Virus record (IMG/VR): IMGVR_UViG_3300046507_000773
Location: 1-64,000 of that record
DNA length: 64,000 bases
Strand: one strand, 5' to 3'
Numbering within the stretch: the first letter of the stretch is position 1; each line of letters starts with the position of its first letter. Both the position numbers and the translations under genes were made by a program. This document shows, piece after piece, positions 32,749 to 62,874 of this stretch. Below the pieces are notes generated by a model. That model was not told where the DNA came from. It made no database searches and saw nothing but the letters and a program-made list of their open reading frames with translations.

Positions 32749-33327
32749 ATGACTCCGCTTATTCCCATTTACAGTGACGAGAGCAAGAAGTTTTTCGTCG
32801 ATCCGGCTCTCCATAAGCCCTACGAGCGCCAGGTGTCGGGCGACATCAGCGTGACCACGAACTTCCTCAAGTTCGGCGAACGTTTCGACCTGATGGATAT
32901 CTCGAGCGCAACCGAGATGTTCGTGACCGGCATCCGTGACGTGACCGATACGATCGATCCGGCGGTGACACTGGAAAAGATCCTGGTGTCGTTCGGTGAC
33001 CTGGGTACTGCAATTTTCGATGTACGCAACCAAGTGTTCGCATCCATGCACTTTCCGCAGGGGGCCAGTTTCGATACCGTCAATCTCGATTTCAGTACCA
33101 CGAAGAAGTTCGAGAACATCGACATTATCCCGAACCCGCCGGTGGGTGACACGTTCCGCATCAAAGTCACGGGCCATGTGAACCTGCGGACTGGCGACAC
33201 GTTCCTGACGGCCATTCTGGAAGCGATGCCGGCCGGTGTGAATATTCCGCGACCCAGTCTCGAAGGGTACACCCTGCAAGCAAATGCGACCAACATCGCG
33301 CGTTTGGCGACGCCGCTGACTGCCTAG
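32749..33327 (+). CDS. Free-standing paralog of the central domain of the major capsid protein
   Basis: Aligns by eye end-to-end to MCP residues ~222-441 encoded at 46960-47619. Confidence 0.85.
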   Translation: MTPLIPIYSDESKKFFVDPALHKPYERQVSGDISVTTNFLKFGERFDLMDISSATEMFVTGIRDVTDTIDPAVTLEKILVSFGDLGTAIFDVRNQVFASMHFPQGASFDTVNLDFSTTKKFENIDIIPNPPVGDTFRIKVTGHVNLRTGDTFLTAILEAMPAGVNIPRPSLEGYTLQANATNIARLATPLTA

Positions 33328-33425: not shown

Positions 33426-33875
33426 ATGAGTACTTACGACAATGGCTTGACTGTCATCGTCAAGGGCGGCACCGCTTCCGGCAAAACGACTGTGGCAGCT
33501 TTCATCGGGCAGAAACTGCAAGAAGCTGGCTTTTCTCACATCGAGTACGACTGGCAAGAACAGCTCGTTCCTGGTGCGATCGAAGACAAGCTGGAGTCGC
33601 TTGCCGCTCGTCGTTCTGACGACAAGTTCTTCCAGAAGCCGATTCGTATCATCGAAGAACAAGAGCATCGCCGGCCCGTTCACAATGAAGAAAAGTTCAG
33701 TGAATACACTTACGAGCCACTCGTGACGCCCTCGGATTATGCAGCCGAAGCCGTACTCGACAGTCTGCGCGCTCGTAAAGGCGTGGGCAGTGAACTCGAC
33801 GGATACGACCAGGAAACCCTGGGTAGCATCTGTAAGGACATCAAGGAGATTATCTCCGAGTCCATGGGCAAGTAA
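33426..33875 (+). CDS. Small P-loop (Walker A) protein related to the 57-59 kb family
   Basis: VIVKGGTASGKTTVAAFIGQKLQEAGFS. Confidence 0.75.
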   Translation: MSTYDNGLTVIVKGGTASGKTTVAAFIGQKLQEAGFSHIEYDWQEQLVPGAIEDKLESLAARRSDDKFFQKPIRIIEEQEHRRPVHNEEKFSEYTYEPLVTPSDYAAEAVLDSLRARKGVGSELDGYDQETLGSICKDIKEIISESMGK

Positions 33876-34035: not shown

Positions 34036-34422
34036 ATGAAGCTTCAGGGTGAAAGTGAATTAAAGAACGTTGAAGTTGTAAAACTCAATGAAGGAGAACA
34101 TTTTGCCGGGGTCGTACTCGGCAATGGAGAAGGACCCGATTACTACCTCGTGTTGCTACCGCATGAACTTCACGATGCCACGTGGGCAGATGCCTTAGAG
34201 TGGGCCGCAAGCTTCGAAGGAACGTTGCCCAATAGGCGCGAGCTTTCGCTTCTGAAAGCCAACTTGGCCGAAAAGTTCGAGCCCGTTCAGTACTGGTCTT
34301 CGGAGAAGAATGAGCACCGTAAGCGAGAAGTGTGGATACAGCACTTCCGCAACGGTAATCAAACTTCCTATGGCCAGTGCTTCCGTGGATCGGCGCGCGC
34401 TGTTCGCCGGGTGCTGATGTAA
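34036..34422 (+). CDS. DUF1566/Lcl-like domain protein
   Basis: W.DA..WA...G.LP.RREL.LL, YWSSE, W.Q.F..G.Q, ARAVRR. Confidence 0.85.
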   Translation: MKLQGESELKNVEVVKLNEGEHFAGVVLGNGEGPDYYLVLLPHELHDATWADALEWAASFEGTLPNRRELSLLKANLAEKFEPVQYWSSEKNEHRKREVWIQHFRNGNQTSYGQCFRGSARAVRRVLM

Positions 34423-46296: not shown

Positions 46297-48474
46297 ATGA
46301 ATCCGTTCCAAAACAAAACCAAGAAGCCGGCACTGCCGGATTCGCAAACCGCGGTCATGCTGCGCTCCACCCTGAGCCAGCTGAACAAGAACAGCTCGCT
46401 GCTGAGCTCGCAAGTTGCCCGCGGCGCCTTCGCCCTGGAAGGTCTGGACGACGAAACCGTCCTGGCCATGGACAACGCAGCTGAAGGCCTGAACGTCGCC
46501 CTGGAACAGATCTTCCAGGAAGCCGGCTTCAAAGCAACCCCGCAGCAGAAGCAGTCGGCAATGATCGCCGGCATGATGGGCGGCGACGTGGGCGCCTACC
46601 TGGGCCACGCTGTTTCCCTGGAAGGTTTCCAGGCCAAGAACACCGACGTCGTGATCGTCGGCGCCGCTGACGCAATCGCCTCGCGTCCGGCAATGGAAGC
46701 GTACGACGAGAAGGAACTGAAGAACTCGATCGCCTACTCGGTCGCGTACAACATGAACTCGCCGCGTCAAGACGCGTTCGGCGAAGCCTTCTTCCCGACC
46801 GTCGTCGTGAACCCGGACCAGGTCGGCTACCAGATCTCGATCCGCCTGACCTACGTCTACCCGGAAGTCCGCCGCAACATCGACGGCTCCGTCAACGACT
46901 TCAAGAAGCGCAACATCATCCAGGCAATCGTCGACCCGTCGATCCTGAAGACCGAGCAGCTGAAGGTCGTGCCGGTGTTCCGTAACGAATCGAAGGCCAA
47001 CTTCGTCGACGAAACCCTGCTGCCGCCGAAGAACATCACCTTCGAAGGCGAGACCATCACCACCAGCGCCCTGCGCTTCGACAACAAGTTCTCGCTGCTG
47101 GGCATCTCCCAGACCCCGGCCCTGCTGGAAACCGGCGTCATGGACAGCACCGACGCGCTGGACGCGGCGATCACGCTGAGCAACGTCTACATGTCGGTCG
47201 CCGGCAAAGTGGGCGGCGTCGACAAGACCGAGGTGTTCAAGTTCATGACGGCCAACATGCCGCTGTCGAACTTCATCTCGATGCAGCAAGACGACTACCG
47301 CATGATGCAAGTCACCTTCATGACCGAAGGCCTGCTGATGACCGGTAACACCAAGACCGTCGCTGGCGCCGCTTCGGGCGTGCTGGCCGACATCGCTGCA
47401 CAGAAGGTCTCGGTCCGTCTGGAACTGACCGTGAACGGCACCGTGAACGTCGAACTGGGTACCACCAACCTGATGGCATCGAAAGTGCGCGTCAAGTCGG
47501 TCACCGACGAAGACGGCAACCTGCTGTCGCTGACCTCGCCGGGCGTCGGCAAGGACATCGCGGACCTGTTCGCAACGGCTGAAGCCATCGGCTACGACCT
47601 GCAAGCGCAGCGTACCAACAGCAACCGTCGTCAGCGCGGCACCCTGCTGGGCCAGACGATCCAGAACCAGGTGTACAACGTGCCCCTGCGCTCGCCGATC
47701 ACCATCCCGCGTCCGCAAACCGTTGGCGATGCCAACGACGCCTCGGACCTGGCTGCACTGATCTCGACGACCCGCATCCGCATCTCGAACGCGGCCGTCG
47801 ACAAGCTGCTGGAAACCGCTGACCAGCTGAAAGAGCTGGTTGCCCAGAACGACCTGCTGGAAAACAACCTGCCGATCCTGGGTATCGCCCGTCACCTGGT
47901 GACCGCCTTCTACGACGAGTTCACCGTCGACGTGCAAGCGTCGATGAACAACCTGACCTCGTCCGAGAAGTACGACGACATCAGCGCCACGCTGATCAAC
48001 CAACTGCGCGACCTCGTGTATCGCATGCTGGTGAAATCGGCCTACCAGGCTGCTGCTGACGCGCTGGCTGGCGGCATCGCTCCGATGCCTGACGTCATCA
48101 TCGGTACCGATCCGAAGACCGCTCGCTACCTGATGGTTTCGGGCGACCTGCGCACCCTCGGCACCGAAGTGAACATCAAGCTGGTCACCACGCTGAACCT
48201 GCAGATGCGCGACACCATCATCGTCGCCTTCGGCCAGCCGAACGCCGGCGACGGTACGCCGAACCCGCTGCACTACGGCAACATGGTCTGGAAACCGGAA
48301 ATGACCCTGATCATGCCGACCCAGCGTAACGGCTCGAACTCGAAAGAGATCACCGTCACCCCGTCGTTCAACCACATCGTGAACGTGCCGATCATGGCCC
48401 GTATCTACGTGAAGGGCATCAGCGACGCGGTGGGCAGCAAAAGCACTGTTGCCTTCGAACAGGTCGGTCCGTAA
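46297..48474 (+). CDS. Major capsid protein (phiKZ gp120-like)
   Basis: 725 aa, extreme codon bias, N-terminal A/S-x-E maturation-type sites (ALE, SLE, AME), QDAFGEAFFPT, synteny. Confidence 0.92.
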   Translation: MNPFQNKTKKPALPDSQTAVMLRSTLSQLNKNSSLLSSQVARGAFALEGLDDETVLAMDNAAEGLNVALEQIFQEAGFKATPQQKQSAMIAGMMGGDVGAYLGHAVSLEGFQAKNTDVVIVGAADAIASRPAMEAYDEKELKNSIAYSVAYNMNSPRQDAFGEAFFPTVVVNPDQVGYQISIRLTYVYPEVRRNIDGSVNDFKKRNIIQAIVDPSILKTEQLKVVPVFRNESKANFVDETLLPPKNITFEGETITTSALRFDNKFSLLGISQTPALLETGVMDSTDALDAAITLSNVYMSVAGKVGGVDKTEVFKFMTANMPLSNFISMQQDDYRMMQVTFMTEGLLMTGNTKTVAGAASGVLADIAAQKVSVRLELTVNGTVNVELGTTNLMASKVRVKSVTDEDGNLLSLTSPGVGKDIADLFATAEAIGYDLQAQRTNSNRRQRGTLLGQTIQNQVYNVPLRSPITIPRPQTVGDANDASDLAALISTTRIRISNAAVDKLLETADQLKELVAQNDLLENNLPILGIARHLVTAFYDEFTVDVQASMNNLTSSEKYDDISATLINQLRDLVYRMLVKSAYQAAADALAGGIAPMPDVIIGTDPKTARYLMVSGDLRTLGTEVNIKLVTTLNLQMRDTIIVAFGQPNAGDGTPNPLHYGNMVWKPEMTLIMPTQRNGSNSKEITVTPSFNHIVNVPIMARIYVKGISDAVGSKSTVAFEQVGP

Positions 48475-50779: not shown

Positions 50780-52426
50780 GTGAGCATGGGAGATAGAGAG
50801 CTAGGGCGTCTCATCGATTTACATACGCCTAAGCTGAATCCTCGCACTGCCAAAGGCCTTGCTGTGGAGCATTTGCAGAAACCTGAACTGTACATCGATC
50901 AGGTGATGCGCTCCGCAGCAAAAGGTTTCCCTGTTGGGTTGCACTACCTCGGCTTTTCCCACACGACGCCGATGGAAGAGTTCAACGAGCAAAAGCGTCG
51001 ACCCAGCAGTAACCGTGGCAATAAGAAGCAGTACGACATTGCGCGCTCGGACGTGTACATGGTGAAGTTCCACTTCCGCTGGCAACCACCGGGCTTACCC
51101 CCGGAAGACTTGCCGCCGCGGTATATCTCTTTGCCGTTTGTCGGCGAAGCAGGTACGATCTATATCAGTGGAAGCCGGTTTGTCATCTCGCCAATCATGG
51201 CAGACCGGGTGATCTCTGTGGGCGAATCGGATGTCTTTGTGCGGTTGCTCCGTGCGAAGCTGACGTTCAAACGCATGGGTCACCACTACCGCATCAACGG
51301 TCAGATCGAGACCGTCAACGTGGTGTGGTCGGAAATCCATAACGGCCGTAGCAAAACAAAGGGGACCAGCGGGGCAGGCAAAGCAAAAACGACGATGATG
51401 CATTACTTGTTGGGCAAGTACGGCTTCACCGAAACGTTTGCTCGCTTCGGGAAATGTTATCCGGTTATTGGTGGACCGGAGATCAACGCCAACAATTACC
51501 CGGCATCGGAATGGACCATCTGTTCCAGCAGCGAAGTCAAACCGCGCAATGCATCGCGTGGCAGCTATGCGCCTTCCACCGTGCGCCTGGCAATTCGCAA
51601 TGAAGAGTTCACCCCAACCGTCAAGTCGATGGTGGCTGGATTCTTCTACATCGCCGACTACTTCCCGCATCGCGTGATTCCCGAGACGCGCTATGTGGAC
51701 TCGCAGCGTCTGTGGATGATCCTGATGGGTCACATTCTGTTCTCTTCGCTTTCCATGGAAGGACAGTTGTACGACAACATCGCGGACCATTACCATTCGC
51801 TTGACTACTACATCGACATCATCGTCGATCAGCAGTTGCGAGAAATCGGTATCGCAGTCGATAACGTGTACCACCTGTTCCATGTCATCATCGAGAATTT
51901 CGACAAGTGGGTTGTGAACTCCGGTGACAAGATGACGAGTGTGTACGACAAGGAGCTGAACGTTCGTCACTTCTTGTTGCACGATATCACTTCGTCGATC
52001 ATGAACATGAACTTCCGTCTGAATGCAGCGGCCAAGAAGGAGCTGACCAAGAAGGAAATCATCAAGATCATGGACGCTACCTTGCGTTCTGGCACGATCT
52101 TCCTGATCACGAAGAAGCACGGCGAAGTGTCAACCCTGTCGTCTCCGGGTGACAACATGGCATTCAAGATGACGGCCATGCTGATCCCGCAGTCGGAATC
52201 GAACAAGCAGTCCAAACGTAATGATCGAGGCATCCTCACCGATCCCTCGAAGCGGTTCCACGTATCGGTGATCGAGATCTGCTGTTACTCGAACCTACCG
52301 AAGAGTGGACCAGACGGCCGCCAACGTCTCAATCATTGCGCTCGTCTTGACGATCGTAATGTGGTGCAAAGGAATCCTGTATTCGTGCCTATTCTGGATG
52401 AAGTGCAGGAACTCATTAAGCGGTGA
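50780..52426 (+). CDS. Non-virion RNA polymerase beta subunit, N-terminal half (phiKZ gp123-like)
   Basis: 548 aa. YISLPFVGEAG.IYISGS.FVISP, HVSVIE.C.Y.NLPKS.PDGR.RLN, synteny. Confidence 0.85.
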   Translation: MSMGDRELGRLIDLHTPKLNPRTAKGLAVEHLQKPELYIDQVMRSAAKGFPVGLHYLGFSHTTPMEEFNEQKRRPSSNRGNKKQYDIARSDVYMVKFHFRWQPPGLPPEDLPPRYISLPFVGEAGTIYISGSRFVISPIMADRVISVGESDVFVRLLRAKLTFKRMGHHYRINGQIETVNVVWSEIHNGRSKTKGTSGAGKAKTTMMHYLLGKYGFTETFARFGKCYPVIGGPEINANNYPASEWTICSSSEVKPRNASRGSYAPSTVRLAIRNEEFTPTVKSMVAGFFYIADYFPHRVIPETRYVDSQRLWMILMGHILFSSLSMEGQLYDNIADHYHSLDYYIDIIVDQQLREIGIAVDNVYHLFHVIIENFDKWVVNSGDKMTSVYDKELNVRHFLLHDITSSIMNMNFRLNAAAKKELTKKEIIKIMDATLRSGTIFLITKKHGEVSTLSSPGDNMAFKMTAMLIPQSESNKQSKRNDRGILTDPSKRFHVSVIEICCYSNLPKSGPDGRQRLNHCARLDDRNVVQRNPVFVPILDEVQELIKR

Positions 52427-52465: not shown

Positions 52466-54511
52466 ATGATGTTCAATCAATCGAATGACCTGCCGTTCGA
52501 TCCCGTCAACCTGCAAGTCCAGCCGATCAACTTCAGCTTGCAGAATCCGCCGTACGTGCCGAACAACGTGAATACCCACGAAGCGTTGTACGATTACGTT
52601 CCGGCGATCTGCGCGCTGCTGGCCAACGAAATCCAAACCAAGGCCACGGCAAGCAATACGAACTTCCTCCGGGTGTTCATGTACAACCAGTGCGCTCCGA
52701 ACAACTTCGCTACCGAAGCGTTCGACCAGCTGGTGCATGCAACCCTGGACTTCGTCGTCTACATCCTGACCCCGCCGGTATCCATCCAGAACCCGTCGGT
52801 CGAAGCGGCTATCGAGTACGCCGTCCCCGAGATGGTGTACATGATGGCTGCCTACAACTGCCAGCAATACCCGCGTCTGGGTAGCGAGGTGCCGCAGCAA
52901 CTCGTTGGTACGCTGAAGGCGCTGATCGAACAGTACCACTTCGTCAGCAAGGAAATCGAGAACCTCAAGCGCGGCGGTCAGAAGTCGAACAACGCCAGCA
53001 TGGGTAATCGCTCGGCGTTCGGTGGTCGTGGTTCGTTCGGTGGTGGTCAAGCCAACAACAACAACCGCGGCTCGTTCGGCGGTGGTGGACAGCAGCAGCA
53101 AAGCAGCTTCGGTGGCTTCGGCAATCGCAACAACAACCAGAACGCCAACACCAATCGCAGCTTCGGCGCCAGCTCGGGTCTGTTCAGCAATACCAGCAGC
53201 ACCCCGATGGGCTTTGGCAAGCAAACCAATTCGTTCGGTGGCGGCGCGTCGCAGCCTGCTACCCAAATCGAAACCAAGCAAACCACCGGCAGCAAGTATC
53301 CGCAGCCGAACTTCAGCAAAGGAACCAACATGCAGCCTGCAGCACAAGCACCGCAGCAATCGCTGGCCGAAGAGCTGTCGTTCGAATCGCCGGCCGGCCC
53401 GTCGAACGAGGACTACACCGCCACCGACTGGGTACCGTCCAAGCGTTACCCGTACTTCCCGGCGTTTAACCCCGCTACCATGACCCTGTCGTACGAAATC
53501 CAGGCCGACGGGACCACTCATCCGATCTTGAAGAAAAGGGACCCGAATATGGAATACGACCGCCACGCTTTGCCGAGTGTTTTCGGTAACGCGCCGGAAA
53601 GCTACGACCTGAGCCGCACGGCTCAATCGCTGCAACGTATCCAGAAGGGCACGCTTGCCATCAACAGCGAAGCAGCCCTGGCTGCAGCGCCGGTCGAAGA
53701 AGGTCAGGAAGAGCCGAAAACGGTTCTGAATCACCCGGAATGGTTCATCGAGACGTCGCTGACCGGCGCCTGGCTCGTGACCCAGCTGGCTCGTCTGGAA
53801 CTGGACCAGTCCCCGGACGTGTTCCGTGCCAACGCGATGGTGACTTCCCCGATCATCGTGACCCCGGCCGAGAAGGAAACCGTCTCGATCCTGTCCAAGT
53901 GCATGACCTACAAGGGCCTGCGCGAACAGATGGAAGCTGCGTACACCCGGATGACCCCGGAACTGTACCAGGCTCTGAACACCCGGATCACCCGGATCGT
54001 GAACCAGAGCATCCGTCTGGAGATGGGCATTCCGAAGCTGTCGATGACGGACTTCCGTACCGACATCGTCGAAGTGCTCGAGTACATGGAAGAGCGTTAC
54101 GGCAAGGACGTGCTCAACGCGTTCACCTCGCGTCAGGAAGCGCACATCAAAGAAGCGATGGCAACCCTGGACGACGAAGCCTCGGCCAAGATGGTCGACA
54201 GCTTCCTGGCTGGCAAGAAGTTCCCGAACGACATCGCGCCGACGATGCTCTGCCTGGCAACCAACTTCAGCCTGACCGTCGTGAACGTGCGTTCGTTCGA
54301 CCTCGAGCTGGAACTGGGCAACGATGGCCTGGGTTCGGCAGTCACGCCGGAAGCTGTACCGGAAATCCATGAGCTGGTCAAGGGTCTGTTCACGGCGCCG
54401 CACGCCGAGATGGTGCATCGTCACCTGATCCGCACGCAAGACGGCCGCGTCATGGAAGCTGCGCAAGGTGCGCTGGGTGACGGTTACTACACCCTGTCGC
54501 TGGTCGAGTAA
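52466..54511 (+). CDS. Conserved-block protein with an FG/N/Q-rich disordered insert
   Basis: 681 aa with strong codon bias. Low-complexity segment at about residues 170-290. Confidence 0.85.
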   Translation: MMFNQSNDLPFDPVNLQVQPINFSLQNPPYVPNNVNTHEALYDYVPAICALLANEIQTKATASNTNFLRVFMYNQCAPNNFATEAFDQLVHATLDFVVYILTPPVSIQNPSVEAAIEYAVPEMVYMMAAYNCQQYPRLGSEVPQQLVGTLKALIEQYHFVSKEIENLKRGGQKSNNASMGNRSAFGGRGSFGGGQANNNNRGSFGGGGQQQQSSFGGFGNRNNNQNANTNRSFGASSGLFSNTSSTPMGFGKQTNSFGGGASQPATQIETKQTTGSKYPQPNFSKGTNMQPAAQAPQQSLAEELSFESPAGPSNEDYTATDWVPSKRYPYFPAFNPATMTLSYEIQADGTTHPILKKRDPNMEYDRHALPSVFGNAPESYDLSRTAQSLQRIQKGTLAINSEAALAAAPVEEGQEEPKTVLNHPEWFIETSLTGAWLVTQLARLELDQSPDVFRANAMVTSPIIVTPAEKETVSILSKCMTYKGLREQMEAAYTRMTPELYQALNTRITRIVNQSIRLEMGIPKLSMTDFRTDIVEVLEYMEERYGKDVLNAFTSRQEAHIKEAMATLDDEASAKMVDSFLAGKKFPNDIAPTMLCLATNFSLTVVNVRSFDLELELGNDGLGSAVTPEAVPEIHELVKGLFTAPHAEMVHRHLIRTQDGRVMEAAQGALGDGYYTLSLVE

Positions 54512-54519: not shown

Positions 54520-54553
54520 CGAGCCCACTCCCGAATCTGGGGGTGGGCTTTTC
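54520..54553 (+). terminator. Intrinsic terminator
   Basis: AGCCCACTCCC/GGGGGTGGGCT stem followed by TTTCTTTT. Confidence 0.8.
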
Positions 54554-55236: not shown

Positions 55237-56763
55237 ATGGCTAAGAAAGAGAAGGGTAGCGTCAACGAGCCGACGCGCGAGGTGTTGGATCTCCGAGATC
55301 AAGGCGGGATTGACATTCGCACCAGCGTTGGCGACGAGGGACCTGTTCCCATTACCGGTAGCGTGGGCGTGGTGGTGCTAGGTAAAGATCCCGAGCGTTC
55401 GGCTATCATGGCGGACGTCATCCACAGCCAGCTGCAAAAGCTCGGCTTGCCGATGGTGGAGCGTCACGAGTTTCACGATGTGGGCAAGAGCCACACGATC
55501 GAATACGATGAACCGTCGGTCATGGACATCATTGGTCGTCGTGATCCCAAGCTTTACGGGACGGCAGTTGTGGTTGCACATGACAACTTCGGCCACAGAC
55601 TGGTGGGTAGCCAGCAAAATCAAATCGTCGGCGATATGGTCAAGCGTTCGGACCTGGTCGCCAACAATGAAAGCAAGGTGAGTCGTATCGGACATATCGA
55701 AGAATCGGACGACACTCGTCGTATCTTCGGTAAAAAGGTCGACAAAACCATCACCGATCTTGCTGACCGGGCGCACAACGAAATCTCGGAAGCCGTCACC
55801 AACATTCTGATCGATGGCGTTTATCGTCTCGAACCGAATGTGGCACCGATCAATCGTCTGCTCGCTGTCCAGGCTTTCGTCAGCCGGACAGGTGTGGGTG
55901 CGGCAGCTTACGATGGCTATCGCCGTGTGGAAAACATGCTGATGGCCGCAGAGCGCGTCGAGAACCATATCGACGAACGGGCGGATTCGGGCTTGTTTGA
56001 ACTTTCCTCGTACGGACTGGATCATCAGTTGCGTTCGAATCTGAAACTGGAAAACCAGATCTCGCATCCGAACCCGACGGAAGAAGACGATGAAATGAAT
56101 GCTCGTGTCTATGACGAGCTGGGGCATCTGATGTGTTCTTACCTGGATGTGCATCAGGACAACACGATGCGTCAAGTGAAAGGTCAGTTCCCGTACGACG
56201 GTAGCCTGATCAATCCAGCCTCCGTCGGCCTGCCGAGCGAAATCGACGGCAAGAAAGTCGAAGCGCGTTTCGTCTCGCACCCGGACGAACTGCGCTACAT
56301 CCTCGACCAGAGCAACGTCAACCTGAACGAGGTGGCGAAGAACAAGATCATCGATACGTTCTTCGCACGCGAGAATGCCAATCCGCCGATCTCGGGTGCT
56401 CGCACCTTTGCGCCGGGCCAGGGCTTCAATCGCGATTTGGCAAAGCTCGAAGGCATCGTCGAGGATCTGCGCAAGATGAACGAAAAGCGTATCGATCCTG
56501 CGGCAACCCTGGAAAAGCATCTCCAGAATCCCAAGGAGCCGAGTGCGGCAGAAAATGCCTGGGCCCAGGGCGTGGTTGACCGTGTGAACAAGAAGATCGC
56601 GGAAGACGCAGCCACGACCTCGGAGACGATCGAAGATCTGCTGGAAGATGCATCCGAACTTCCGATCAACGTTACCGTTCATGAGAATGGCATCAGCATG
56701 ACCAATACGAAAGATGGACCCATGCTCACGCTTCGTAATGGCGTGAAGGTCGGACGTTTCTAG
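55237..56763 (+). CDS. Hypothetical protein with an N-terminal module of the 57-59 kb family
   Basis: VGVVVLG...IMADVIHSQLQKLGL...PSVMDIIGRRDP. Confidence 0.8.
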   Translation: MAKKEKGSVNEPTREVLDLRDQGGIDIRTSVGDEGPVPITGSVGVVVLGKDPERSAIMADVIHSQLQKLGLPMVERHEFHDVGKSHTIEYDEPSVMDIIGRRDPKLYGTAVVVAHDNFGHRLVGSQQNQIVGDMVKRSDLVANNESKVSRIGHIEESDDTRRIFGKKVDKTITDLADRAHNEISEAVTNILIDGVYRLEPNVAPINRLLAVQAFVSRTGVGAAAYDGYRRVENMLMAAERVENHIDERADSGLFELSSYGLDHQLRSNLKLENQISHPNPTEEDDEMNARVYDELGHLMCSYLDVHQDNTMRQVKGQFPYDGSLINPASVGLPSEIDGKKVEARFVSHPDELRYILDQSNVNLNEVAKNKIIDTFFARENANPPISGARTFAPGQGFNRDLAKLEGIVEDLRKMNEKRIDPAATLEKHLQNPKEPSAAENAWAQGVVDRVNKKIAEDAATTSETIEDLLEDASELPINVTVHENGISMTNTKDGPMLTLRNGVKVGRF

Positions 56764-56859
56764 TTCAGTAACTAATGGTAAAAAAGCTAGCCTCTATTCA
56801 TCTTACGTAGAGGCTAGCAGTTGGGCCTGTCGTACATCTAAACGCTGGAAGGAATCCAC

Positions 56860-57183
56860 ATGCTGCACTTGAATCGCCCCATCGCCCAAACAATCGCGAT
56901 GATGGTCGACTTTACTGTGCTTTCACCTGAATACCACGGCACCGACATCCATGTTGTCCCAGACGCCCTGCAGGGAAGGCCTGTATCGATCTTTACTGCA
57001 CCAACTGCATCACCGAATAAAAGTGTCGTGATTTACGAGCCGACATTTGATGAAACCGTCTACGATGGCATCAATGTTTCGTTCATCAAGAATCATGCCA
57101 GTCTTCTGGATGATAATTTCAGAGGACCAGACGTAGCGAATATTGCCAGGCAACTCGTGGAATTCCTTGCACATTCTGCGTAA
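56860..57183 (+). CDS. Hypothetical protein
   Basis: 107 aa, GAAGGA RBS. Confidence 0.7.
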   Translation: MLHLNRPIAQTIAMMVDFTVLSPEYHGTDIHVVPDALQGRPVSIFTAPTASPNKSVVIYEPTFDETVYDGINVSFIKNHASLLDDNFRGPDVANIARQLVEFLAHSA

Positions 57184-57305
57184 TGTTTGCTGTTTGTTAA
57201 TAAAATGCTATGTTAAAATTATTGACCACGCTATTTTAATGAAAGGAATAATTACTTCACCAGTTTTGTTTTACTTTACAGTAACTTAGAGAAGGAAGAA
57301 AACAA

Positions 57306-57626
57306 ATGACAGCAGTTCCAGGAAACATTCACGTCAACATCAGCGGCCAGGACAAGGATGCCCGCGATGTGGTGGCGACCATCGTCAACGATGCACTGAC
57401 CAAAGAAGGGTTCACGAATACCGCAATCGTGAACTCGCACGGCGAACCCATGGCTGGCGTGCACGCGCCGTCGGTGCTCGACGTGCTGAAAAGCCGTGAC
57501 CCGGAGTTCTTCGCAACCCCGGTGCAGATCTGGGCTGACTCGCCCGTCGCAGAAGCGATCGTGAATGCGATCGTGCCTACCGTCGTCGAAGCCGACGTTA
57601 CCATCAACGAAATCGACCCGAAATAA
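57306..57626 (+). CDS. P-loop-derived mini-protein, array member 1
   Basis: ALTKEGFTN...PSVLDVLKSRDP. Confidence 0.8.
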   Translation: MTAVPGNIHVNISGQDKDARDVVATIVNDALTKEGFTNTAIVNSHGEPMAGVHAPSVLDVLKSRDPEFFATPVQIWADSPVAEAIVNAIVPTVVEADVTINEIDPK

Positions 57627-57627
57627 A

Positions 57628-58155
57628 ATGACTTTCGAAAAATCCGAAGAAACTCCCAAGCAAGCTCCGCGTCCAGCATCGAGCACGATCCACATCAACA
57701 GCAACAGCCGCATCGGCGAGCGCGTGATCACCAACATCGTCGCTGAAGCGCTGAAGGAAAAGGGCTTCACCAACGTGGACGTGCGCAAGTCCCATGGCGA
57801 AACCCACGTCGTCAAGAACGGTATGGAACCGCTGTCGGATGATCCGACGACCGTCATGGACGCCCTGATCGCCCGCAACCCGTCGTTCATGAACAGCCGC
57901 GTGACCGTGCAGCCGAACGGCTACCATTACGGTGGCGACATCCCGCCGGACAGCGAATACCCGGCCGCCGGCCTGCCGATCGTCGGCTACAAGACCGCGC
58001 AGTACGCCGACACGAACATCATCGCTGTCGACGAAAAGGGCGGTGAGCAATACATCGCCCACGCCAATTCGCCGGAAGTTGCCAAGGCACTGATCCAAGT
58101 GCTGGAAAAGTCCGACGTCAAGATCCCGGTCGACGCCATCCAGGCGCCGTTCTAA
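57628..58155 (+). CDS. P-loop-derived mini-protein, array member 2
   Basis: ALKEKGFTN...TVMDALIARNP. Confidence 0.8.
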   Translation: MTFEKSEETPKQAPRPASSTIHINSNSRIGERVITNIVAEALKEKGFTNVDVRKSHGETHVVKNGMEPLSDDPTTVMDALIARNPSFMNSRVTVQPNGYHYGGDIPPDSEYPAAGLPIVGYKTAQYADTNIIAVDEKGGEQYIAHANSPEVAKALIQVLEKSDVKIPVDAIQAPF

Positions 58156-58199
58156 TACCAGATCGCGCTCTCCGCTACGAACACTCCCCGTAGCGTCTT

Positions 58200-58231
58200 G
58201 GAGCGCCCATAACTAGGGCGCTCCTTTTTTT
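58200..58231 (+). terminator. Intrinsic terminator with overlapping antiterminator
   Basis: GGAGCGCCC/GGGCGCTCC stem followed by T7. Upstream GCGCTC competes for the 5' arm. Confidence 0.8.
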
Positions 58232-58248
58232 GTTAAGGAAGGACTATA

Positions 58249-58671
58249 GTGAACGTCCAAAAGCAAGCAAACGGTATCGACATCGTTATCGAAGGTGGTA
58301 GCGATTACAACAACCACATGGTAGCGATGGTAGCTACCAGAGCCCTGCACGATGCAGGCTTTACCAATGCGCACCGCGTTTTCACTCCGACCGGTACCAG
58401 CGAAGTGCATCGCCTGGCGAATACTGATCAGTACGTTCCCTCGGTGCTGGACGTTATTCGTAAGCAAGACCCGTCGGTGTTCCGTACGCCGGTCGTCATG
58501 GCTGCGCATGATCCGAAACCTTTCCCCAAAGAGCGTCGGCGCCACGATCGCGCGCTCTTGCAAGCAGATTCCATCGCCGAAGCCCTGAGCGTGAGCGATG
58601 ACCCGGATGAAATCTGGGCAAACCTGCAAGACGGAGACAAGCACAGAATCGTGCGTGAACTGGTGCGTTAA
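58249..58671 (+). CDS. P-loop-derived mini-protein, array member 3
   Basis: ALHDAGFTN...PSVLDVIRKQDP. Confidence 0.8.
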   Translation: MNVQKQANGIDIVIEGGSDYNNHMVAMVATRALHDAGFTNAHRVFTPTGTSEVHRLANTDQYVPSVLDVIRKQDPSVFRTPVVMAAHDPKPFPKERRRHDRALLQADSIAEALSVSDDPDEIWANLQDGDKHRIVRELVR

Positions 58672-58701
58672 TCCAGGGATCAACTAAAGTGAGGTAACAC
58701 A

Positions 58702-59016
58702 ATGATGAATCGAGACCATCTGAGCATCGCAGTCAAAAGCCCGGCTGTCGTGGCTAATGATCTCATTGGCCGAATCATTAAAGACGCCCTGAAAGGTGGC
58801 GGCTTCAAGTCCGTTGAAGTCTACGACCAAAAAGGCGATCCCGTCCCGCCAAAACCCCTGGTGACGATGCTCGATGCAGTACGTTCGCTCAGCCCGAAAA
58901 CTTTTCAAACGCGTGTCGCTATTCGCACGAAGGATGAAGACCATACGGAGTTGACATTCACCGAACAACTGCAAGGCGTCGAACTGGAAACTGGTGAAAC
59001 TGTGGAACAAGACTAA
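58702..59016 (+). CDS. P-loop-derived mini-protein, array member 4
   Basis: ALKGGGFKS...TMLDAVRSLSP. Confidence 0.8.
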   Translation: MMNRDHLSIAVKSPAVVANDLIGRIIKDALKGGGFKSVEVYDQKGDPVPPKPLVTMLDAVRSLSPKTFQTRVAIRTKDEDHTELTFTEQLQGVELETGETVEQD

Positions 59017-59058
59017 CGGCCTATTCAATGGAGTAGCGTTAGCATATGGAGGTTTAAA

Positions 59059-59367
59059 ATGGTTGAAGATGACATCAACATCCTCATTACTGGAGGACCT
59101 GATTCGGGCAAGGCTGTTGCTGCTGTACTCATCAACAAAGCTTTGGCCGACAATGGCTTTTCAGACGTCATCATGCTTTCGGATAGTGGCAAAGCCATTT
59201 CCCCGATTGAAGCAGTACCGTCCATTCTGGACGTAATTAAGAACGGCACTCCAAGGCTGTTCGAAACTCCCGTGATTGTCCAGGAGATCAGAACGAAGGC
59301 ACCTTACTTTCAGCGTCCCGCACGACGATTAGAGCCCTCAGGGCCAATTCTGGAAGTAGAAGGGTAA
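59059..59367 (+). CDS. P-loop-derived mini-protein, array member 5 (Walker A nearly intact)
   Basis: ILITGGPDSGKA...ALADNGFSD...PSILDVIKNGTP. Confidence 0.8.
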   Translation: MVEDDINILITGGPDSGKAVAAVLINKALADNGFSDVIMLSDSGKAISPIEAVPSILDVIKNGTPRLFETPVIVQEIRTKAPYFQRPARRLEPSGPILEVEG

Positions 59368-59485
59368 TCCCGGTGTTCCGGGAACTTCGCACTAGGGAAA
59401 GAATAAAGAGTCTGCTAAAGCAGCATAAGAAGCCAGTGGAGGAAACTCCACTGGCCAGTATGACATCGATTAAGAGGGCTATGGA

Positions 59486-59941
59486 ATGACCGTCAAGTTC
59501 GAGATTACTAGTGAAGCAACATCAGCTGTGTGCGCAGAGTTTCAACAAGAGATCGTCCAAAAGATCCAGTACTGCTTGGTCCATACGCCGGATGCTATTA
59601 CCCGTGAGAATCTGCATCAGATTGCATGGAAGACGAACATTGCCGTTCGTAAGAATGATACCGCATCGCTCATTACGATCCACCGTTTTGTTAATGAGAG
59701 TTACGACAAGCTTGCAGAAGCTGAACATGTTTCGCTTTCGATGAAAGTGCAACAGAGAATGAACGTGATCAATACCCTGGTCAACGGCATGCTCAAAGAC
59801 CACCCAACAGATCAACGCCTTCAAGAGCGCATCTTGACAATCGTGTACCCAATTGAGCAAGTCAAGTCCGATCCCGAGAAGTTTATTCGTTTAGCCAATG
59901 TCGCCATCACCCAGCTGACTACGTTAAGCCGTTCATTGTAA
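59486..59941 (+). CDS. Hypothetical helical protein
   Basis: 151 aa, convergent with the portal gene. Confidence 0.75.
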   Translation: MTVKFEITSEATSAVCAEFQQEIVQKIQYCLVHTPDAITRENLHQIAWKTNIAVRKNDTASLITIHRFVNESYDKLAEAEHVSLSMKVQQRMNVINTLVNGMLKDHPTDQRLQERILTIVYPIEQVKSDPEKFIRLANVAITQLTTLSRSL

Positions 59942-59951
59942 AGCAGCATAA

Positions 59952-60006
59952 GCCCCGCTACGCCACCTTTCCTATTATAGGATTGGTTGGCGTAGCGGGG
60001 GCCTTT
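59952..60006. terminator. Hairpin between convergent genes
   Basis: GCCCCGCTACGCCA/TGGCGTAGCGGGG stem flanked by GCATAA and TTTATGCCG. Confidence 0.75.
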
Positions 60007-60036: not shown

Positions 60037-62874
60037 TCAGCTTGCCTGCTCGTCATCAGTCTTGCCTTTATCGTCGCCGTCCTTTGGTGGTTCTTCGCCT
60101 TCTGGTTTCGCTGCAGCTTCGTCTGCTGCCGGTTCACCTTCAGCACCACCTGCTGCGTCAGGAGTCGCAGGTTCAGCAGTTGCATCAGCGCCGTCATTCA
60201 GACCGCCACCGAGGTCACTGCCCAAGTCAAACCCATCATTCCCGCCACCGCCACCGAACTCATCGTCCGTAGTGCTACCGCCACCGCTCTGGTCATCGGT
60301 GCTACCGCCACCAGATGCTTCCATGTCGCCAACCTTCGCTTGCAGCACTTCATTGGATGCACGCTTGATTGGTTGCAGGTTGACCATGAACGAAGTCAGG
60401 TGCTTAGTGAGGGACTCGATGTGTTCCATCGCGCCGTTGTACAGTTCCATCGTCGGCGAACCGTCTTCGTTGGTTTCCGTGATGGAGGACAGTTCAGGCA
60501 AGATGCCGTTGTCTGCCATGTACTTCTGCATGAAGCGTGCCTTGACGATTGCACGAACCATGCCGGTCTGGTTTGCCACGTCGCCACCGGACTCGCTCGT
60601 GTAGAACGCGTCAGCAATGATGTGGTCCAGTGCAGCATCCAGCGCTTTGCCATAGACTTCCATGGCTGCCAGTTGGTTTTCCAGCGTGACCGAATTCGGA
60701 CGCGGCAGGTTTGCTTCGAAGCCAGCGATGAATTGCTTCAGGAATTCCGTGATGATGAACATCTCCACTTCTTCCTTCTTGACACTCTCGGACATCTGCT
60801 TGTCCTTCATGTACTCTTCGATGCGGGTTTCCAGCTTGTCCTTGTTCTTGACGAGGATTTCCAGCAGCGCTTTCCACAGGTTTTCCGAAGCACCCATGTA
60901 TTTGCGCATGTGGTCAGACAGTTGCGGCGTGAAGACGTCCTGGATGTTGATCACCTGCTTACTCAGCAGGATGTTGTTCGACACCGCAGTGGTTGCGAAC
61001 TCGATGGGAATGCCCGAGTCCACGAGTTCCGGCGGAACGCCCGAACTCATGATGCTGTCTTTACGCAGGCTGTCGGCCAGGTCCGTGTCGGGCTTGACGT
61101 ACTGGTTCGACTTTTCACCGAAGTCCACACGAACGTCCGGCATGCCGGGGTGACCTTCCGTGATGAATTCCAGGGAGGCCAGGTTCAGGTGGTCGACGAT
61201 GTCAGTCGGACTCGTCATGCCAACAGGTGGCAGCGTCTTCTGACGGGAACGCACGACTTCGTGACGGATGATTTCTTCGCTCCTGAACGGGTCAGGATCT
61301 TTCTCATCGAGTTTGATCTTGACTTCGGTGCGGCCGATGGAATTTTTGATACCGGCCATGACGTTCGAGAACAGAAGCGCCGAACGCAGACCGTTCGTCA
61401 CCTTCATCTGGTCCAGCATGGATTCACCCACGCCGTTCTCGTCGTATTCAAAAGCGATGTACGTCACGAGTTCAGCTGGCAGGAACACCAGCTGCGTATG
61501 TTGCTTAGCCAGAGCGCGGGCGAACATGATGCGGTAGATCGATTCGCGCTTGGCAATCGACGCACCTTCACCATACGCACCGTTACGAAGACGCGCCAGC
61601 AGTTCTTGCTCGACCATTTCACCGAACACACGAGCCGAGAAGTCCAGGTGTTGCTGGTTCATCGGATCGAACCCGTTCATCTCGCCCTTGACCTTATTGA
61701 GCATGACAGACGGGAAGGACGATGCACTCGACAGACGCGAACCCATGTCCAAGTTCTGCTGGTATTCAGAAGCGTTGGTAACTGGATTACCTTCGCCGTC
61801 CGTGATCATGAAGTAACCCAGGTGCTGCGAGACGTTACCGGGCATGAAGACCGGCAGCAGTGCTTGCGGTGGGATATGCATGACCAAAGGTTCGCCAACA
61901 GCACGGCGATTCAATTGGTCTTGCGTCTTCAGGGTCGTGATCGGATTGTACTTGAACGCACGGTTCTTGTAGATCAGATCGACCAGCTGACGATCGTTCA
62001 TCATCGGGTTCTTGTGCGACTCCATGGCAGCACGATGGCCACCACTACCCAAAGCCTGCTGGATCTTCTGTTCACGCAAGCGCTGGTTCAAGCGCGGCAC
62101 GTTCAGGATAGCAGGGTTGTCGCAGACGGTGATGAACGTCTCTTGTGCTTTACCTTCGAACGCCAGGGAGAGCGTGACGTTCTGATCGATGTTCTGGTGC
62201 TTGGTATAGCCACCAAAACTCTCGAGCGAAATACTCGACATCGAAGTCGGTGTCGGCGCTTCTTTAACAACCGGGCCCAGGATCGACAGCGGACGGATGT
62301 TGCCTTTGTCGTCGAAATGATCCTTGATCATCTCCATCGAAATCTGGCGACCACCATTGATTACGTCGTCCAGAGTGTTCTCCGGAATAACAGCAATGGG
62401 ATAAGCGCCTTCGTCGAAAATTGCTTTACCGAGGATATCGGCGAGCTTCGGCGTTATTTTATAGTCCTTTTCCAGATGGGCTTTAATCGCAGCCATCATT
62501 TCGGAGGAAACCTCCGGCGGTAAGAGCCCTTCTGCCGATGTGTAATTCAGCTCGACAGTAACCATGTCTTTCGGTGCCAGGACGGAGCTCACCAGGATTT
62601 GCTTGGTGCGTTTCAGGTCCGGCAATACCTGAAGGACGGTTTTAGCATCGATGATGTCTTGTGCTTTCCGCTGGCCAATTTGTTTCAACTGGCTGACATC
62701 TGGGGTGTGCGGCGAAAGGTTCCCTTTGTCGTCGTACGTTGCAGAATTATTGCCACGGATTGTCTTACTCAGGATGGCCGCCATTTCCGGGTTTTGTCGC
62801 GTGAGCTTCATCACCGGGAAATGTTCACCCTGGTTGGCACTCTGTAAGGCCTGTTTGAAAGTTTCACCAGCCAT
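60037..62874 (-). CDS. Portal protein (phiKZ gp129-like)
   Basis: 945 aa. ILVSSVLAPKDM, GAYPIAVIPE, GEPLVMHIP...PV..PG....HLGYF, S/A-x-E sites, acidic Gly-rich tail, divergent from the gp128-like gene. Confidence 0.85.
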   Translation of the reverse strand: MAGETFKQALQSANQGEHFPVMKLTRQNPEMAAILSKTIRGNNSATYDDKGNLSPHTPDVSQLKQIGQRKAQDIIDAKTVLQVLPDLKRTKQILVSSVLAPKDMVTVELNYTSAEGLLPPEVSSEMMAAIKAHLEKDYKITPKLADILGKAIFDEGAYPIAVIPENTLDDVINGGRQISMEMIKDHFDDKGNIRPLSILGPVVKEAPTPTSMSSISLESFGGYTKHQNIDQNVTLSLAFEGKAQETFITVCDNPAILNVPRLNQRLREQKIQQALGSGGHRAAMESHKNPMMNDRQLVDLIYKNRAFKYNPITTLKTQDQLNRRAVGEPLVMHIPPQALLPVFMPGNVSQHLGYFMITDGEGNPVTNASEYQQNLDMGSRLSSASSFPSVMLNKVKGEMNGFDPMNQQHLDFSARVFGEMVEQELLARLRNGAYGEGASIAKRESIYRIMFARALAKQHTQLVFLPAELVTYIAFEYDENGVGESMLDQMKVTNGLRSALLFSNVMAGIKNSIGRTEVKIKLDEKDPDPFRSEEIIRHEVVRSRQKTLPPVGMTSPTDIVDHLNLASLEFITEGHPGMPDVRVDFGEKSNQYVKPDTDLADSLRKDSIMSSGVPPELVDSGIPIEFATTAVSNNILLSKQVINIQDVFTPQLSDHMRKYMGASENLWKALLEILVKNKDKLETRIEEYMKDKQMSESVKKEEVEMFIITEFLKQFIAGFEANLPRPNSVTLENQLAAMEVYGKALDAALDHIIADAFYTSESGGDVANQTGMVRAIVKARFMQKYMADNGILPELSSITETNEDGSPTMELYNGAMEHIESLTKHLTSFMVNLQPIKRASNEVLQAKVGDMEASGGGSTDDQSGGGSTTDDEFGGGGGNDGFDLGSDLGGGLNDGADATAEPATPDAAGGAEGEPAADEAAAKPEGEEPPKDGDDKGKTDDEQAS

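What the first reader, a model, noticed from the sequence alone, without database searches (positions are those of the whole stretch)
57306..59367. Tandem array of five mini-proteins showing graded decay of a Walker A loop
Seen: all share I.(I/V).(G/S)-loop-helix-AL...GF(T/S/K)(N/D/S)...(P/T)(S/T)(V/I/M)(L/M)D(V/A)....P..F...V. The loop goes from GGPDSGKA (59059) to GGSDYNNH, GQDKDARD, SPAVVAND and SNSRIGER. Each ~75-aa module covers only the start of an NMP-kinase-like fold. The array interrupts the conserved core block. Inference: an expanded family of phosphate or nucleotide binders, or hetero-oligomer subunits, with diversified specificity, possibly sponges.
Basis: partly seen in the sequence, partly recalled or inferred. 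Interest (0 to 1): 0.6.

Follow-up and report, generated by a model that had tools for sequence, protein, structure and literature searches.

The report
Mini P-loop-derived protein family array
Five neighbouring genes of an uncultured phiKZ-like jumbo phage encode small acidic proteins that are cut-down relatives of nucleotide kinases; most copies have lost the nucleotide-binding motifs but are still conserved by selection, so this is an unannotated family rather than decaying junk.

Summary
Five adjacent + strand genes (57306-59367) encode mutually homologous proteins of 102-175 aa.

New findings:
- **More copies.** A sixth copy forms the N-terminus of the 508-aa ORF 55237-56763. A seventh (33426-33875) has a canonical Walker A.
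- **Large unannotated family.** It has at least 291 clusters at 50% identity and no Pfam, PHROG, NCBIfam or PDB name.
- **Coupled motifs.** Only 18 of the 149 best representatives keep GxxxxGK[ST]. Of those, 17 also keep a Glu at the end of strand 3 (Walker-B-like), against 8 of 120 degenerate members.
- **Kinase likeness.** The profile of motif-bearing members matches the N-terminal half of small-molecule P-loop kinases (1y63, E 6e-5).
- **No ongoing decay in m1-m4.** Three related phage contigs hold 1:1 orthologues. dN/dS is 0.06-0.45 (portal 0.09), and m1, m3 and m4 each keep a recognisable loop (m2 less so).
- **Structure.** A homodimer model passed its controls at low pLDDT. Monomer fold searches were blank.

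The function is unknown. My best reading is one phosphate-binding copy plus conserved pseudo-P-loop paralogues that act as dimeric binding or adaptor modules. The sponge idea is neither supported nor excluded.

The parts
57306..57626 (+). m1, 106 aa, degenerate loop SGQDKDAR, no strand-3 Glu
   Evidence: ORF. Family profile E 2.4e-29. Orthologues in L022, L009 and L025. dN/dS 0.16 against L022.
57628..58155 (+). m2, 175 aa, loop NSNSRIGER, with a C-terminal extension of about 75 aa. Its start lies one base after the m1 stop, so translational coupling is likely.
   Evidence: dN/dS 0.45. Orthologue clade supported 100/99.
58200..58224 (+). Intrinsic-terminator-like hairpin (9-bp stem, 8 GC pairs, T run) between m2 and m3. 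It may split the array into two transcription units.
58249..58671 (+). m3, 140 aa, GTG start, loop GGSDYNNH. The YNNH part is kept in all four lineages.
   Evidence: dN/dS 0.09.
58702..59016 (+). m4, 104 aa, loop KSPAVVAND. The pattern KSP....ND is kept in all four lineages.
   Evidence: dN/dS 0.06.
59059..59367 (+). m5, 102 aa, near-intact Walker A GGPDSGKA (Ala in place of Ser/Thr) plus a Glu at the end of strand 3 (PVIVQE)
   Evidence: The L009 orthologue has the canonical GSPHSGKS. The L025 orthologue has a loop one residue shorter. The homodimer model passed.
55237..56763 (+). m6, 508 aa. The family module lies at residues ~40-125 (window ~55354-55611) with a degenerate loop, fused to a C-terminal part of about 380 aa without known domains.
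   Evidence: Profile hit E 1.1e-7 and 2.3e-13. Orthologues of 484, 323 and 488 aa.
33426..33875 (+). m7, 149 aa, a distant copy with canonical Walker A GGTASGKT and a strand-3 Glu (PIRIIE)
   Evidence: Weak uridine-kinase and AAA_18 hits below the curated cut-offs.
56860..57183 (+). 107-aa ORF between m6 and m1. It is not a family member but is conserved in the syntenic contigs.
59486..59941 (+). 151-aa ORF between m5 and the portal-like gene. It is not a family member but is conserved in the syntenic contigs.
59952..60002 (.). Long GC-rich inverted repeat between the convergent 151-aa ORF and the portal-like gene, probably a two-way terminator
   Evidence: Read directly from the sequence printed. 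The scan did not list it because its loop exceeds 8 nt.
60037..62874 (-). 945-aa portal-like virion structural protein, the right border of the insertion
   Evidence: phrog_3004 E 2.7e-217. 48.5% identity to Burkholderia phage FLC9.
52466..54511 (+). Conserved 681-aa protein, the left border of the variable region, followed by a terminator-like hairpin at 54521-54550
   Evidence: Homologous to FLC9 gp89; takes the place of RP12 ORF091 by position and size.

Best explanation
**What is shown.** The array belongs to a large, unannotated family of small acidic phage proteins. They are built on an ~80-residue module: strand 1, loop, helix 1, strand 2, helix 2, strand 3. This module is a truncated derivative of the P-loop kinase core. 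A minority of members keep a canonical Walker A in the strand-1/helix-1 loop together with a Walker-B-like Glu at the end of strand 3. Most members have lost both.

**State of the copies in this phage.** m7 is fully intact. m5 is nearly intact (GK followed by Ala, Glu kept). m1-m4 and the fused copy m6 are pseudo-P-loop forms. All five array genes are old paralogues with 1:1 orthologues in three related phage contigs. They evolve under purifying selection. m1, m3 and m4 keep a loop of their own (m2 only loosely).

**What is inferred.**
- The module works as a dimer whose sheet is completed by the partner's strands.
- The intact copies bind a phosphate-bearing ligand, most simply a nucleotide, at the P-loop near the dimer interface.
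- The degenerate copies no longer bind phosphate through that loop. They have been kept as ligand-independent binding or adaptor subunits, either as homodimers that present their variable loops and C-terminal tails, or as heterodimer partners of the intact copy.
- They act inside the infected cell rather than in the virion.
For: - **Homology and extra copies:**
- **Family size and lack of annotation:** 291 representative clusters at E <= 1e-3, 58 at <= 1e-10. No Pfam, PHROG, NCBIfam or PADLOC hit and no source names.
- **Motif census:** 18 canonical Walker A, 11 scored GxxxxGK-other (four of them m6-type proteins matched in another register), 120 degenerate. Glu at profile column 76 occurs in 17/18 against 8/120.
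- **P-loop kinase ancestry:** the Walker-A subfamily profile against PDB gives 1y63 at E 6.2e-5 over residues 2-60, cytidylate kinase at 6e-4 and APS kinases at 2.5e-3. The recurrent sub-threshold Pfam hits of members are almost all P-loop families. Atlas structure neighbours of residues 1-54 are MinD/ParA and thymidylate kinase N-termini. In the AF2 model, helix 1 starts at the Walker Lys.
- **Selection:** against L022, dN/dS is 0.16, 0.45, 0.09, 0.06 and 0.15 for m1 to m5, with portal at 0.09. In the strain variant, 8 of 10 coding SNPs are synonymous. m1, m3 and m4 loops are recognisable in four lineages. Orthologue clades are supported 100/99 for m2, m3, m4 and m6.
- **Dimer:** ipSAE 0.45 against a best control of 0.15. 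That mark was reached by 20 of 30 proteins solved as pairs of one chain and by 1 of 23 solved as single chains. The runs share at least 86% of contacts, and the partner's pLDDT is 58. Contacts are strand 1 with strand 1' (antiparallel), and strands 1 and 2 with strand 3'.
- **One intact copy per array elsewhere:** the L009 m5 orthologue, the first member in L014, and the FLC9 gp81 N-terminus.
- **Not virion:** RP31 ORF181 is absent from the 32 virion proteins of PMC5468394 Table S3.
Against: - No ligand, partner or phenotype is known for any member.
- The monomer models (pLDDT 78-82) form almost no sheet and match no solved fold (Foldseek none at E <= 1e-3; best VIA Z 2.7). The P-loop fold is therefore inferred from sequence only.
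- The dimer model has low pLDDT (58) and used my own alignment, so its calibration holds only roughly.
- The Walker A / Glu coupling is not corrected for phylogeny. On supported branches only 2 independent pairs exist, so that test has no power.
- Degenerate copies occur alone in RP12 and RP31 and as singletons in L027/L028 contigs that hold only part of a genome. An intact partner is therefore not obligatory.
- m5 itself lacks the Mg-coordinating Ser/Thr, and its L025 orthologue has a shortened loop. Even m5 may no longer bind nucleotide.
Confidence: 0.45

Rival explanations
1. The N-terminal module is mainly a dimerisation handle. The function lies in the variable C-terminal tails or domains that it presents in pairs: acidic tails, the 380-aa part of m6, the 500-aa part of FLC9 gp81, and the 178-404-aa L014 members. 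The P-loop remnant is then an evolutionary relic in most copies.
For: The module is at or near the N-terminus in nearly all 149 representatives, and total lengths range from 74 to 488 aa. The tails are strongly acidic and the family median pI is 4.4. The best-conserved residues are core or turn residues (L29, G33, F34, P65), not loop residues. The homodimer model passed its controls.
Against: Many members, including m1, m4 and m5, have almost no tail beyond the module. m1, m3 and m4 keep a recognisable loop, so the loops are not free to drift. The Walker A and Glu pair is kept together in about 12% of members, which argues for a ligand-linked function at least there.
Confidence: 0.25
2. The copies are sponges or binders for nucleotides or immune signalling molecules. 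The different loops give different ligand specificities, and the proteins serve as counter-defence.
For: The proteins are small, acidic, probably oligomeric phage accessory proteins. They sit in a tandem paralogue array at a variable genome site and are patchily distributed among related phages. The intact copies carry a phosphate-binding loop.
Against: Four of the five array loops have lost every phosphate-binding residue. The loops are conserved rather than diversifying among orthologues (dN/dS 0.06-0.45). Pfam, PADLOC and fold searches gave no match at all, so no likeness to a known sponge showed up; whether those libraries hold the known sponges was not checked. No defence-related context was seen.
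Confidence: 0.15
3. The copies are head-assembly or virion-associated accessory proteins, for example portal- or capsid-linked chaperones or internal proteins. This reading rests on their position between the major head protein and the portal-like gene.
For: The position between the head protein/RNAP block and the portal-like gene is conserved in six contigs or phages. Family members lie beside short major-head-protein paralogues in two loci: window 32749-33327 next to m7, and FLC9 gp87 inside the array.
Against: The family is absent from phiKZ, RSF1, LucasX and AgentSmith. In RP12, RP31 and the L027 contig the copies are singletons beside nucleotide-metabolism genes (DHFR, thymidylate synthase), not head genes. 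RP31 ORF181 was not among the 32 virion proteins detected down to 12.8 kDa. The site is a convergent operon end, a usual place for accessory insertions.
Confidence: 0.12
4. The degenerate copies are duplicates of a small P-loop gene that are decaying neutrally and have no function of their own.
For: There is a visible series from intact to unrecognisable loops. m5 orthologues differ in Walker A integrity: canonical, GK-Ala, and shortened.
Against: All copies are intact ORFs, and m1, m3, m4 and m5 have ribosome-binding sites. 1:1 orthologues persist across lineages whose portals are only 68% identical. dN/dS is 0.06-0.45, similar to the portal. Strain-level SNPs are 8 of 10 synonymous.
Confidence: 0.03

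Closest known systems
Small-molecule P-loop kinases (AK6/Fap7-like adenylate kinase 1y63, cytidylate, thymidylate, APS and uridine kinases)
   Same: Strand 1, Walker A, helix 1 and strand 2 align at sequence level for the motif-bearing members (E 6.2e-5 to 2.5e-3). The m5 strand-1 string INILITG is identical to that of 1y63. An acidic residue ends strand 3, as in a Walker B motif.
   Different: The module has only about 80 residues and three strands. It has no strands 4 and 5, no lid and no NMP-binding domain. Curated Pfam and NCBIfam cut-offs are never reached. About 80% of members have no Walker A at all. A strand-exchanged dimer is predicted instead of a monomeric three-layer fold.
Designed 'P-loop prototype' / phosphate-loop proteins (PDB 6c2u; PMC10119929, PMC7758060)
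   Same: Both are very short strand/P-loop/helix proteins that lack the rest of the NTPase domain. The prototypes need self-association and bind phosphate ligands (from my own reading of the work behind 6c2u; PMC10119929 and PMC7758060 were seen only as search listings). The family profile hits 6c2u weakly (E 0.008-0.4).
   Different: The prototypes are laboratory constructs inferred from consensus or ancestral sequences. This is a natural, diversified phage family with a second conserved motif (the strand-3 Glu) and mostly degenerate loops. The likeness is weak and limited to the loop-helix element.
Pseudoenzyme paralogues of NTPases (general phenomenon)
   Same: The catalytic or binding motifs are lost while the fold and purifying selection are retained. 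The degenerate copies occur side by side with an intact paralogue.
   Different: No partner, regulator role or activity is known here. The parent 'enzyme' is itself only a fragment of an NTPase domain.
Phage nucleotide sponges (Tad1, Tad2, Acb2 and similar)
   Same: Both are small oligomeric phage accessory proteins. The intact copies have a phosphate-binding loop.
   Different: No sequence or fold match of any kind was found. Whether those libraries hold the known sponges was not checked, so this is only weak evidence. Binding was not tested.

Membership tests
P-loop NTPase superfamily (NMP-kinase-like) | Walker A GxxxxGK[ST] between strand 1 and helix 1 | tested here: inconclusive
   Met by m7 (GGTASGKT). 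Nearly met by m5 (GGPDSGKA, with Ala in place of Ser/Thr). Not met by m1-m4 or m6. In the family, 18 of 149 representatives meet it.
P-loop NTPase superfamily (NMP-kinase-like) | Walker B: an acidic residue at the end of a hydrophobic strand | tested here: inconclusive
   A Glu at profile column 76 after P-[IV]-x-[IV]-x is present in m5, m7 and 17 of 18 Walker-A members. It is absent in m1-m4 and m6. Its role as a Walker B is inferred from position only.
P-loop NTPase superfamily (NMP-kinase-like) | Significant profile match at curated thresholds | tested here: not met
   All Pfam and NCBIfam hits lie below the curated cut-offs. A profile search of PDB is significant only for the Walker-A subfamily and only over the first ~60 residues.
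P-loop NTPase superfamily (NMP-kinase-like) | Five-stranded parallel sheet (order 2-3-1-4-5) in a three-layer alpha/beta/alpha domain with lid and NMP-binding parts | tested here: not met
   The module is about 80 residues with three strand segments, and there is no room for strands 4 and 5 or a lid. The monomer models match no solved fold. The dimer model suggests the order 2-3'-1-1'-3-2' (low pLDDT).
Phage signal/nucleotide sponges (Tad1, Tad2, Acb2 types) | Sequence or fold likeness to a known sponge family | tested here: inconclusive
   No hit of any kind in Pfam, PADLOC, PDB or BFVD fold searches. I did not confirm that these libraries hold the known sponges, and the monomer model is poor, so this is weak negative evidence only.
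Phage signal/nucleotide sponges (Tad1, Tad2, Acb2 types) | Binding of an immune signalling nucleotide | not testable with these tools
   This needs purified protein and ligand-binding assays.
Tautomerase-like beta-alpha-beta oligomers | Fold match and catalytic N-terminal Pro | tested here: not met
   The Atlas's own low-confidence model of m1 (pLDDT 0.51) aligns with tautomerase clusters at TM 0.54. However, m1 starts with Met-Thr-Ala-Val and no member shows a conserved Pro1. I treat it as a shape coincidence of a beta-alpha-beta unit.
TALE-like repeat proteins (BurrH) | Tandem 33-residue repeats with a significant per-repeat match | tested here: not met
   The whole-protein E-values of 2.6e-13 and 4e-8 come from summing 10-15 repeat matches, each with a per-repeat E above 80. 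The window proteins hold one module each.
phiKZ-like virion or inner-body proteins | Presence in purified virions | tested here: inconclusive
   The only data are for the RP31 singleton ORF181, which is not among the 32 proteins found by band-excision MS. No data exist for the array phages.

The most novel reading that the evidence does not exclude
The intact members are natural minimal P-loop proteins. An ~80-residue chain carrying both a Walker A and a Walker-B-like Glu would complete a working nucleotide site only by strand-exchanged dimerisation. That would make them a living counterpart of the designed 'P-loop prototypes'. The conserved degenerate paralogues in the array would be dedicated pseudo-subunits that heterodimerise with the intact copy to tune or retarget it during jumbo-phage infection.
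Probability: 0.2. Interest if true: 0.8.

Novelty: new variant of a known kind. Interest (0 to 1): 0.55.

Why it matters
If the intact members bind or turn over nucleotides, they would be among the smallest natural proteins with a two-motif P-loop site. They would then be a ready test case for ideas on how P-loop enzymes arose from short self-associating strand-loop-helix units. The array also gives a clean natural series within one genome: intact, half-intact and fully degenerate copies, all under selection. That series is suited to studying how a binding motif is lost while the scaffold is reused. For phage biology, it defines an unannotated accessory family (at least 291 clusters) that expands repeatedly at one variable site of chimallivirus-like genomes. 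Cultured phages are available for testing: FLC9, RP12/RP31 and FLC1-1B.

Tried and rejected
- **Megablast of the region against phages:** no match. tblastn of m5, m6, P0016 and P0035 found only weak FLC9 hits or nothing.
- **Monomer fold searches:** AF2 on 7 and on 65 sequences gave pLDDT 78 and 82 but almost no sheet. Foldseek against PDB found nothing at E <= 1e-3 for either model. VIA-align wide gave a best Z of 2.7. BFVD found only the RP12 family member. The Atlas search found own-family viral clusters plus weak P-loop N-termini. The fold question stays open.
- **BurrH/TALE hit:** rejected as a repeat-summing artefact.
- **Tautomerase likeness of m1:** rejected.
- **Family scans:** NCBIfam and PADLOC gave nothing.
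- **Phylogeny-corrected test of Walker A / Glu coupling:** only 2 independent pairs on supported branches, so it has no power.
- **A bona fide kinase in the own genome for profile-profile comparison:** none was found. The best AAA_18 hit is m7 itself, below the cut-off.
- **Expression:** no RNA run holds the region. Contigs from four rhizosphere DNA runs show no indels or joints in the array.
- **Literature:** no paper on this family was found.
Full report
**Setting.** The window is the first 64 kb of a 226.8-kb uncultured virus record (CheckV completeness 86%). Nearly identical sequence occurs in five rhizosphere metagenome runs. It is a phiKZ-like jumbo phage.
- The 945-aa protein at 60037-62874 (-) matches phrog_3004 at E 2.7e-217. 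It is 48.5% identical to its Burkholderia phage FLC9 homologue and 35% to those of Ralstonia phages RP12 and RP31.
- Upstream on the + strand lie the major head protein (46297-48474), a phiKZ-type RNA polymerase subunit (50780-52426) and a conserved 681-aa protein (52466-54511).

**Observation.** The five + strand ORFs are real and lie at the stated coordinates.
- Pairwise BLASTP gives 28-48 bits for most pairs. The weakest are m2-m5 at 25 bits and m2-m3 and m3-m4 at about 20 bits.
- A profile of the five, run over all six frames of the whole genome, recovers them at E 1e-32 to 1e-41 and finds only two more places.
- The first extra place is the N-terminus (residues ~40-125) of the 508-aa ORF 55237-56763 (m6). 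The second is a 149-aa ORF at 33426-33875 (m7), whose loop is a canonical Walker A, GGTASGKT.
- m1, m3, m4 and m5 have good ribosome-binding sites. m2 starts one base after the m1 stop.
- A strong terminator-like hairpin (58200-58224) separates m1-m2 from m3-m5. A long inverted repeat (59952-60002) closes the unit before the convergent portal-like gene.

**The family.** Pfam, PHROGs, NCBIfam and PADLOC give nothing at their thresholds. Because the family scans left the proteins open, I ran the exhaustive representative search with the seven-module profile.
- It found 291 clusters at E <= 1e-3 and 58 at <= 1e-10. Almost all are proteins of 90-180 aa with the module at or near the N-terminus, and a few reach 220-490 aa. 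One 7,048-aa repeat protein in the list is an artefact.
- No source gives any member a name.
- The proteins are acidic, with a median pI of 4.4.
- Among the 149 best representatives, 18 have GxxxxGK[ST], 11 were scored GxxxxGK-other (four of these are m6-type proteins matched in another register) and 120 have degenerate loops.
- The best-conserved positions are core and turn residues (L29, G33, F34, P65 in m5 numbering), not loop residues.

**Is it P-loop derived?** Three lines of sequence evidence say yes for the N-terminal half.
- The sub-threshold Pfam hits of individual members are almost all P-loop families: APS_kinase 8 members, AAA_18 7, AAA 6, nSTAND3 6 and KTI12 4.
- A profile of the Walker-A-bearing members alone hits solved P-loop kinases. 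The AK6-like Leishmania protein 1y63 scores E 6.2e-5 over residues 2-60. Cytidylate kinase scores 6e-4, and APS, thymidylate and adenylate kinases follow.
- Walker-A members carry a Glu at the end of strand 3 (P-[IV]-x-[IV]-x-E) in 17 of 18 cases, against 8 of 120 degenerate members (Fisher p 7.6e-15). This is where a Walker B acidic residue would sit. m5 and m7 have this Glu. m1-m4 and m6 do not.

The Fisher figure is not corrected for shared ancestry. On a tree built without the trait columns, each trait needs at least 9 changes. Only 2 independent pairs lie on supported branches, so the corrected test has no power.

**Structure.** The structural evidence is weak.
- AF2 models of m5 (pLDDT 78 and 82) place helix 1 exactly at the Walker Lys but form almost no sheet.
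- They match no solved fold: Foldseek found nothing, and the best VIA Z was 2.7.
- Atlas models align residues 1-54 with MinD/ParA and thymidylate kinase N-termini at TM about 0.4.
- The module has room for only three strands, so it cannot be a complete NTPase domain.

**Not decay in progress.** Three other contigs carry the same layout: m6-like, small ORF, m1, m2, m3, m4, m5, ~150-aa ORF, then the portal-like gene on the opposite strand. They are L022, L009 and L025.
- The orthologue sets of m2, m3, m4 and m6 in the window, L022 and L009 are supported at 100/99 or better on the tree.
- Against L022, dN/dS is 0.16 (m1), 0.45 (m2), 0.09 (m3), 0.06 (m4) and 0.15 (m5), compared with 0.09 for the portal.
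- A strain variant seen in three metagenomes differs by 10 coding SNPs in the array, of which 8 are synonymous.
- Three of the four degenerate loops are recognisable in all four lineages: GG[ST]xYNNH in m3, KSP....ND in m4 and G.DK..[KR]D in m1. The m2 loop is conserved only loosely.
- Only m5 shows erosion of the motif itself. It is canonical (GSPHSGKS) in L009, GK-Ala in the window and L022, and one residue shorter in L025, always with the Glu kept.

**Distribution and context.** The family is an accessory one.
- FLC9 has gp82-85 and gp88. The N-terminus of gp81 (622 aa) is a Walker A plus Glu copy lying next to the portal-like gene.
- A more distant contig (L014) has five members at the same site, the first one intact. 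The other four form their own clade (84/81), which points to an independent expansion.
- Another contig has a single intact copy at that site.
- RP12 and RP31 have one degenerate copy elsewhere, next to DHFR. FLC1-1B has two copies. phiKZ, RSF1, LucasX and AgentSmith have none.
- In another phage context, a singleton lies between an SNF2 helicase and thymidylate synthase.
- RP12 has no array between its 706-aa protein and the portal-like gene. The site is a convergent operon end.
- The RP31 copy (ORF181) is not among the 32 virion proteins reported in Table S3 of PMC5468394. This is weak evidence against a structural role.

**Oligomer.** The monomer models leave strand 1 and strand 3 unpaired, so I used the one complex job on an m5 homodimer.
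- It scored ipSAE 0.45 against a best control of 0.15, which passes the mark.
- That mark was reached by 20 of 30 proteins solved as pairs of one chain and by 1 of 23 proteins solved as single chains. The counts hold only roughly here because my own alignment was used.
- The runs share at least 86% of contacts. The partner's pLDDT is only 58.
- The lowest-error contacts pair strand 1 with strand 1' in antiparallel register (9:9, 10:8). They also place strand 3' against strands 1 and 2 of the other chain (8:73-75, 37-39:72-74).
- This gives an intertwined sheet of order 2-3'-1-1'-3-2', which keeps the kinase-like 2-3-1 order by exchange. It is a model, not a measurement.

**Interpretation.**
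- Shown: this is a large unannotated family of truncated P-loop-kinase-like modules. Loss of Walker A and of the strand-3 Glu go together. All five array genes are under purifying selection, and m1, m3 and m4 have loops conserved per paralogue. The array recurs at one variable site.
- Inferred: the module dimerises. The intact copies (m7, perhaps m5) bind phosphate or nucleotide. The degenerate copies are pseudo-P-loop binding or adaptor subunits with an intracellular role.
- The sponge idea remains possible for the intact copies but has no specific support.
- The neutral-decay reading is largely refuted.

**Caveats.** No experimental datum exists for any member. The fold is unresolved. Heteromer formation was not tested. 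Expression could not be examined because no RNA run holds the region.

Noticed in passing
window 32749-33327 (+), directly upstream of m7: This 192-aa ORF is a short paralogue of the major head protein. It matches Pfam PhiKZ_MCP at E 2.4e-22 and phrog_3231 at 3.7e-19. It is 36% identical over 84 aa to residues 224-306 of the window's own head protein (46297-48474). FLC9 gp87, which lies inside the FLC9 array, also resembles the head protein (24% over 224 aa, E 5e-7). So family members lie beside head-protein fragments in two loci.
   Followed up: partly
family profile against PDB entries 4cja and 4cj9 (BurrH): The module's helix-1 end, strand 2 and helix 2 stretch (AL..GF.NV....G......VLD) resembles the 33-residue TALE-like repeat of Burkholderia BurrH. 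The summed matches give a whole-protein E of 2.6e-13, but every single repeat match has E above 80. I judged it an artefact of summing repeats.
   Followed up: yes
RP12 ORF184/ORF185 (L017) and L027/L028: Singleton family members in other phages lie next to nucleotide-metabolism genes: DHFR in RP12/RP31, and an SNF2 helicase and thymidylate synthase in L027/L028. This rests on only two contexts, so it is a lead and not a pattern.
   Followed up: no
window 55237-56763 (m6), residues ~130-508: The C-terminal part of about 380 aa has no family match. There is one weak Pfam hit to the viral cysteine peptidase C107 (E 0.002, below the cut-off). The part is conserved in orthologues of 323-488 aa.
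   Followed up: no
window 56800-60000 in runs X1-X5: The same phage (99% identity or more) is present in five rhizosphere metagenome runs from different studies. A strain variant differs at 11 places in 3.2 kb: 8 synonymous, 2 conservative replacements and 1 intergenic. No indels or copy-number variants of the array were seen.
   Followed up: yes
window 29665-30546 (+): This 293-aa ORF has a dCTP deaminase-like / dUTPase domain (PF22769, E 6.2e-28).
   Followed up: no
window 34036-34422 (+): This 128-aa ORF downstream of m7 has a sub-threshold match to the Lcl C-terminal domain (PF07603, E 1.2e-6, 29.3 bits against a cut-off of 34.9).
   Followed up: no
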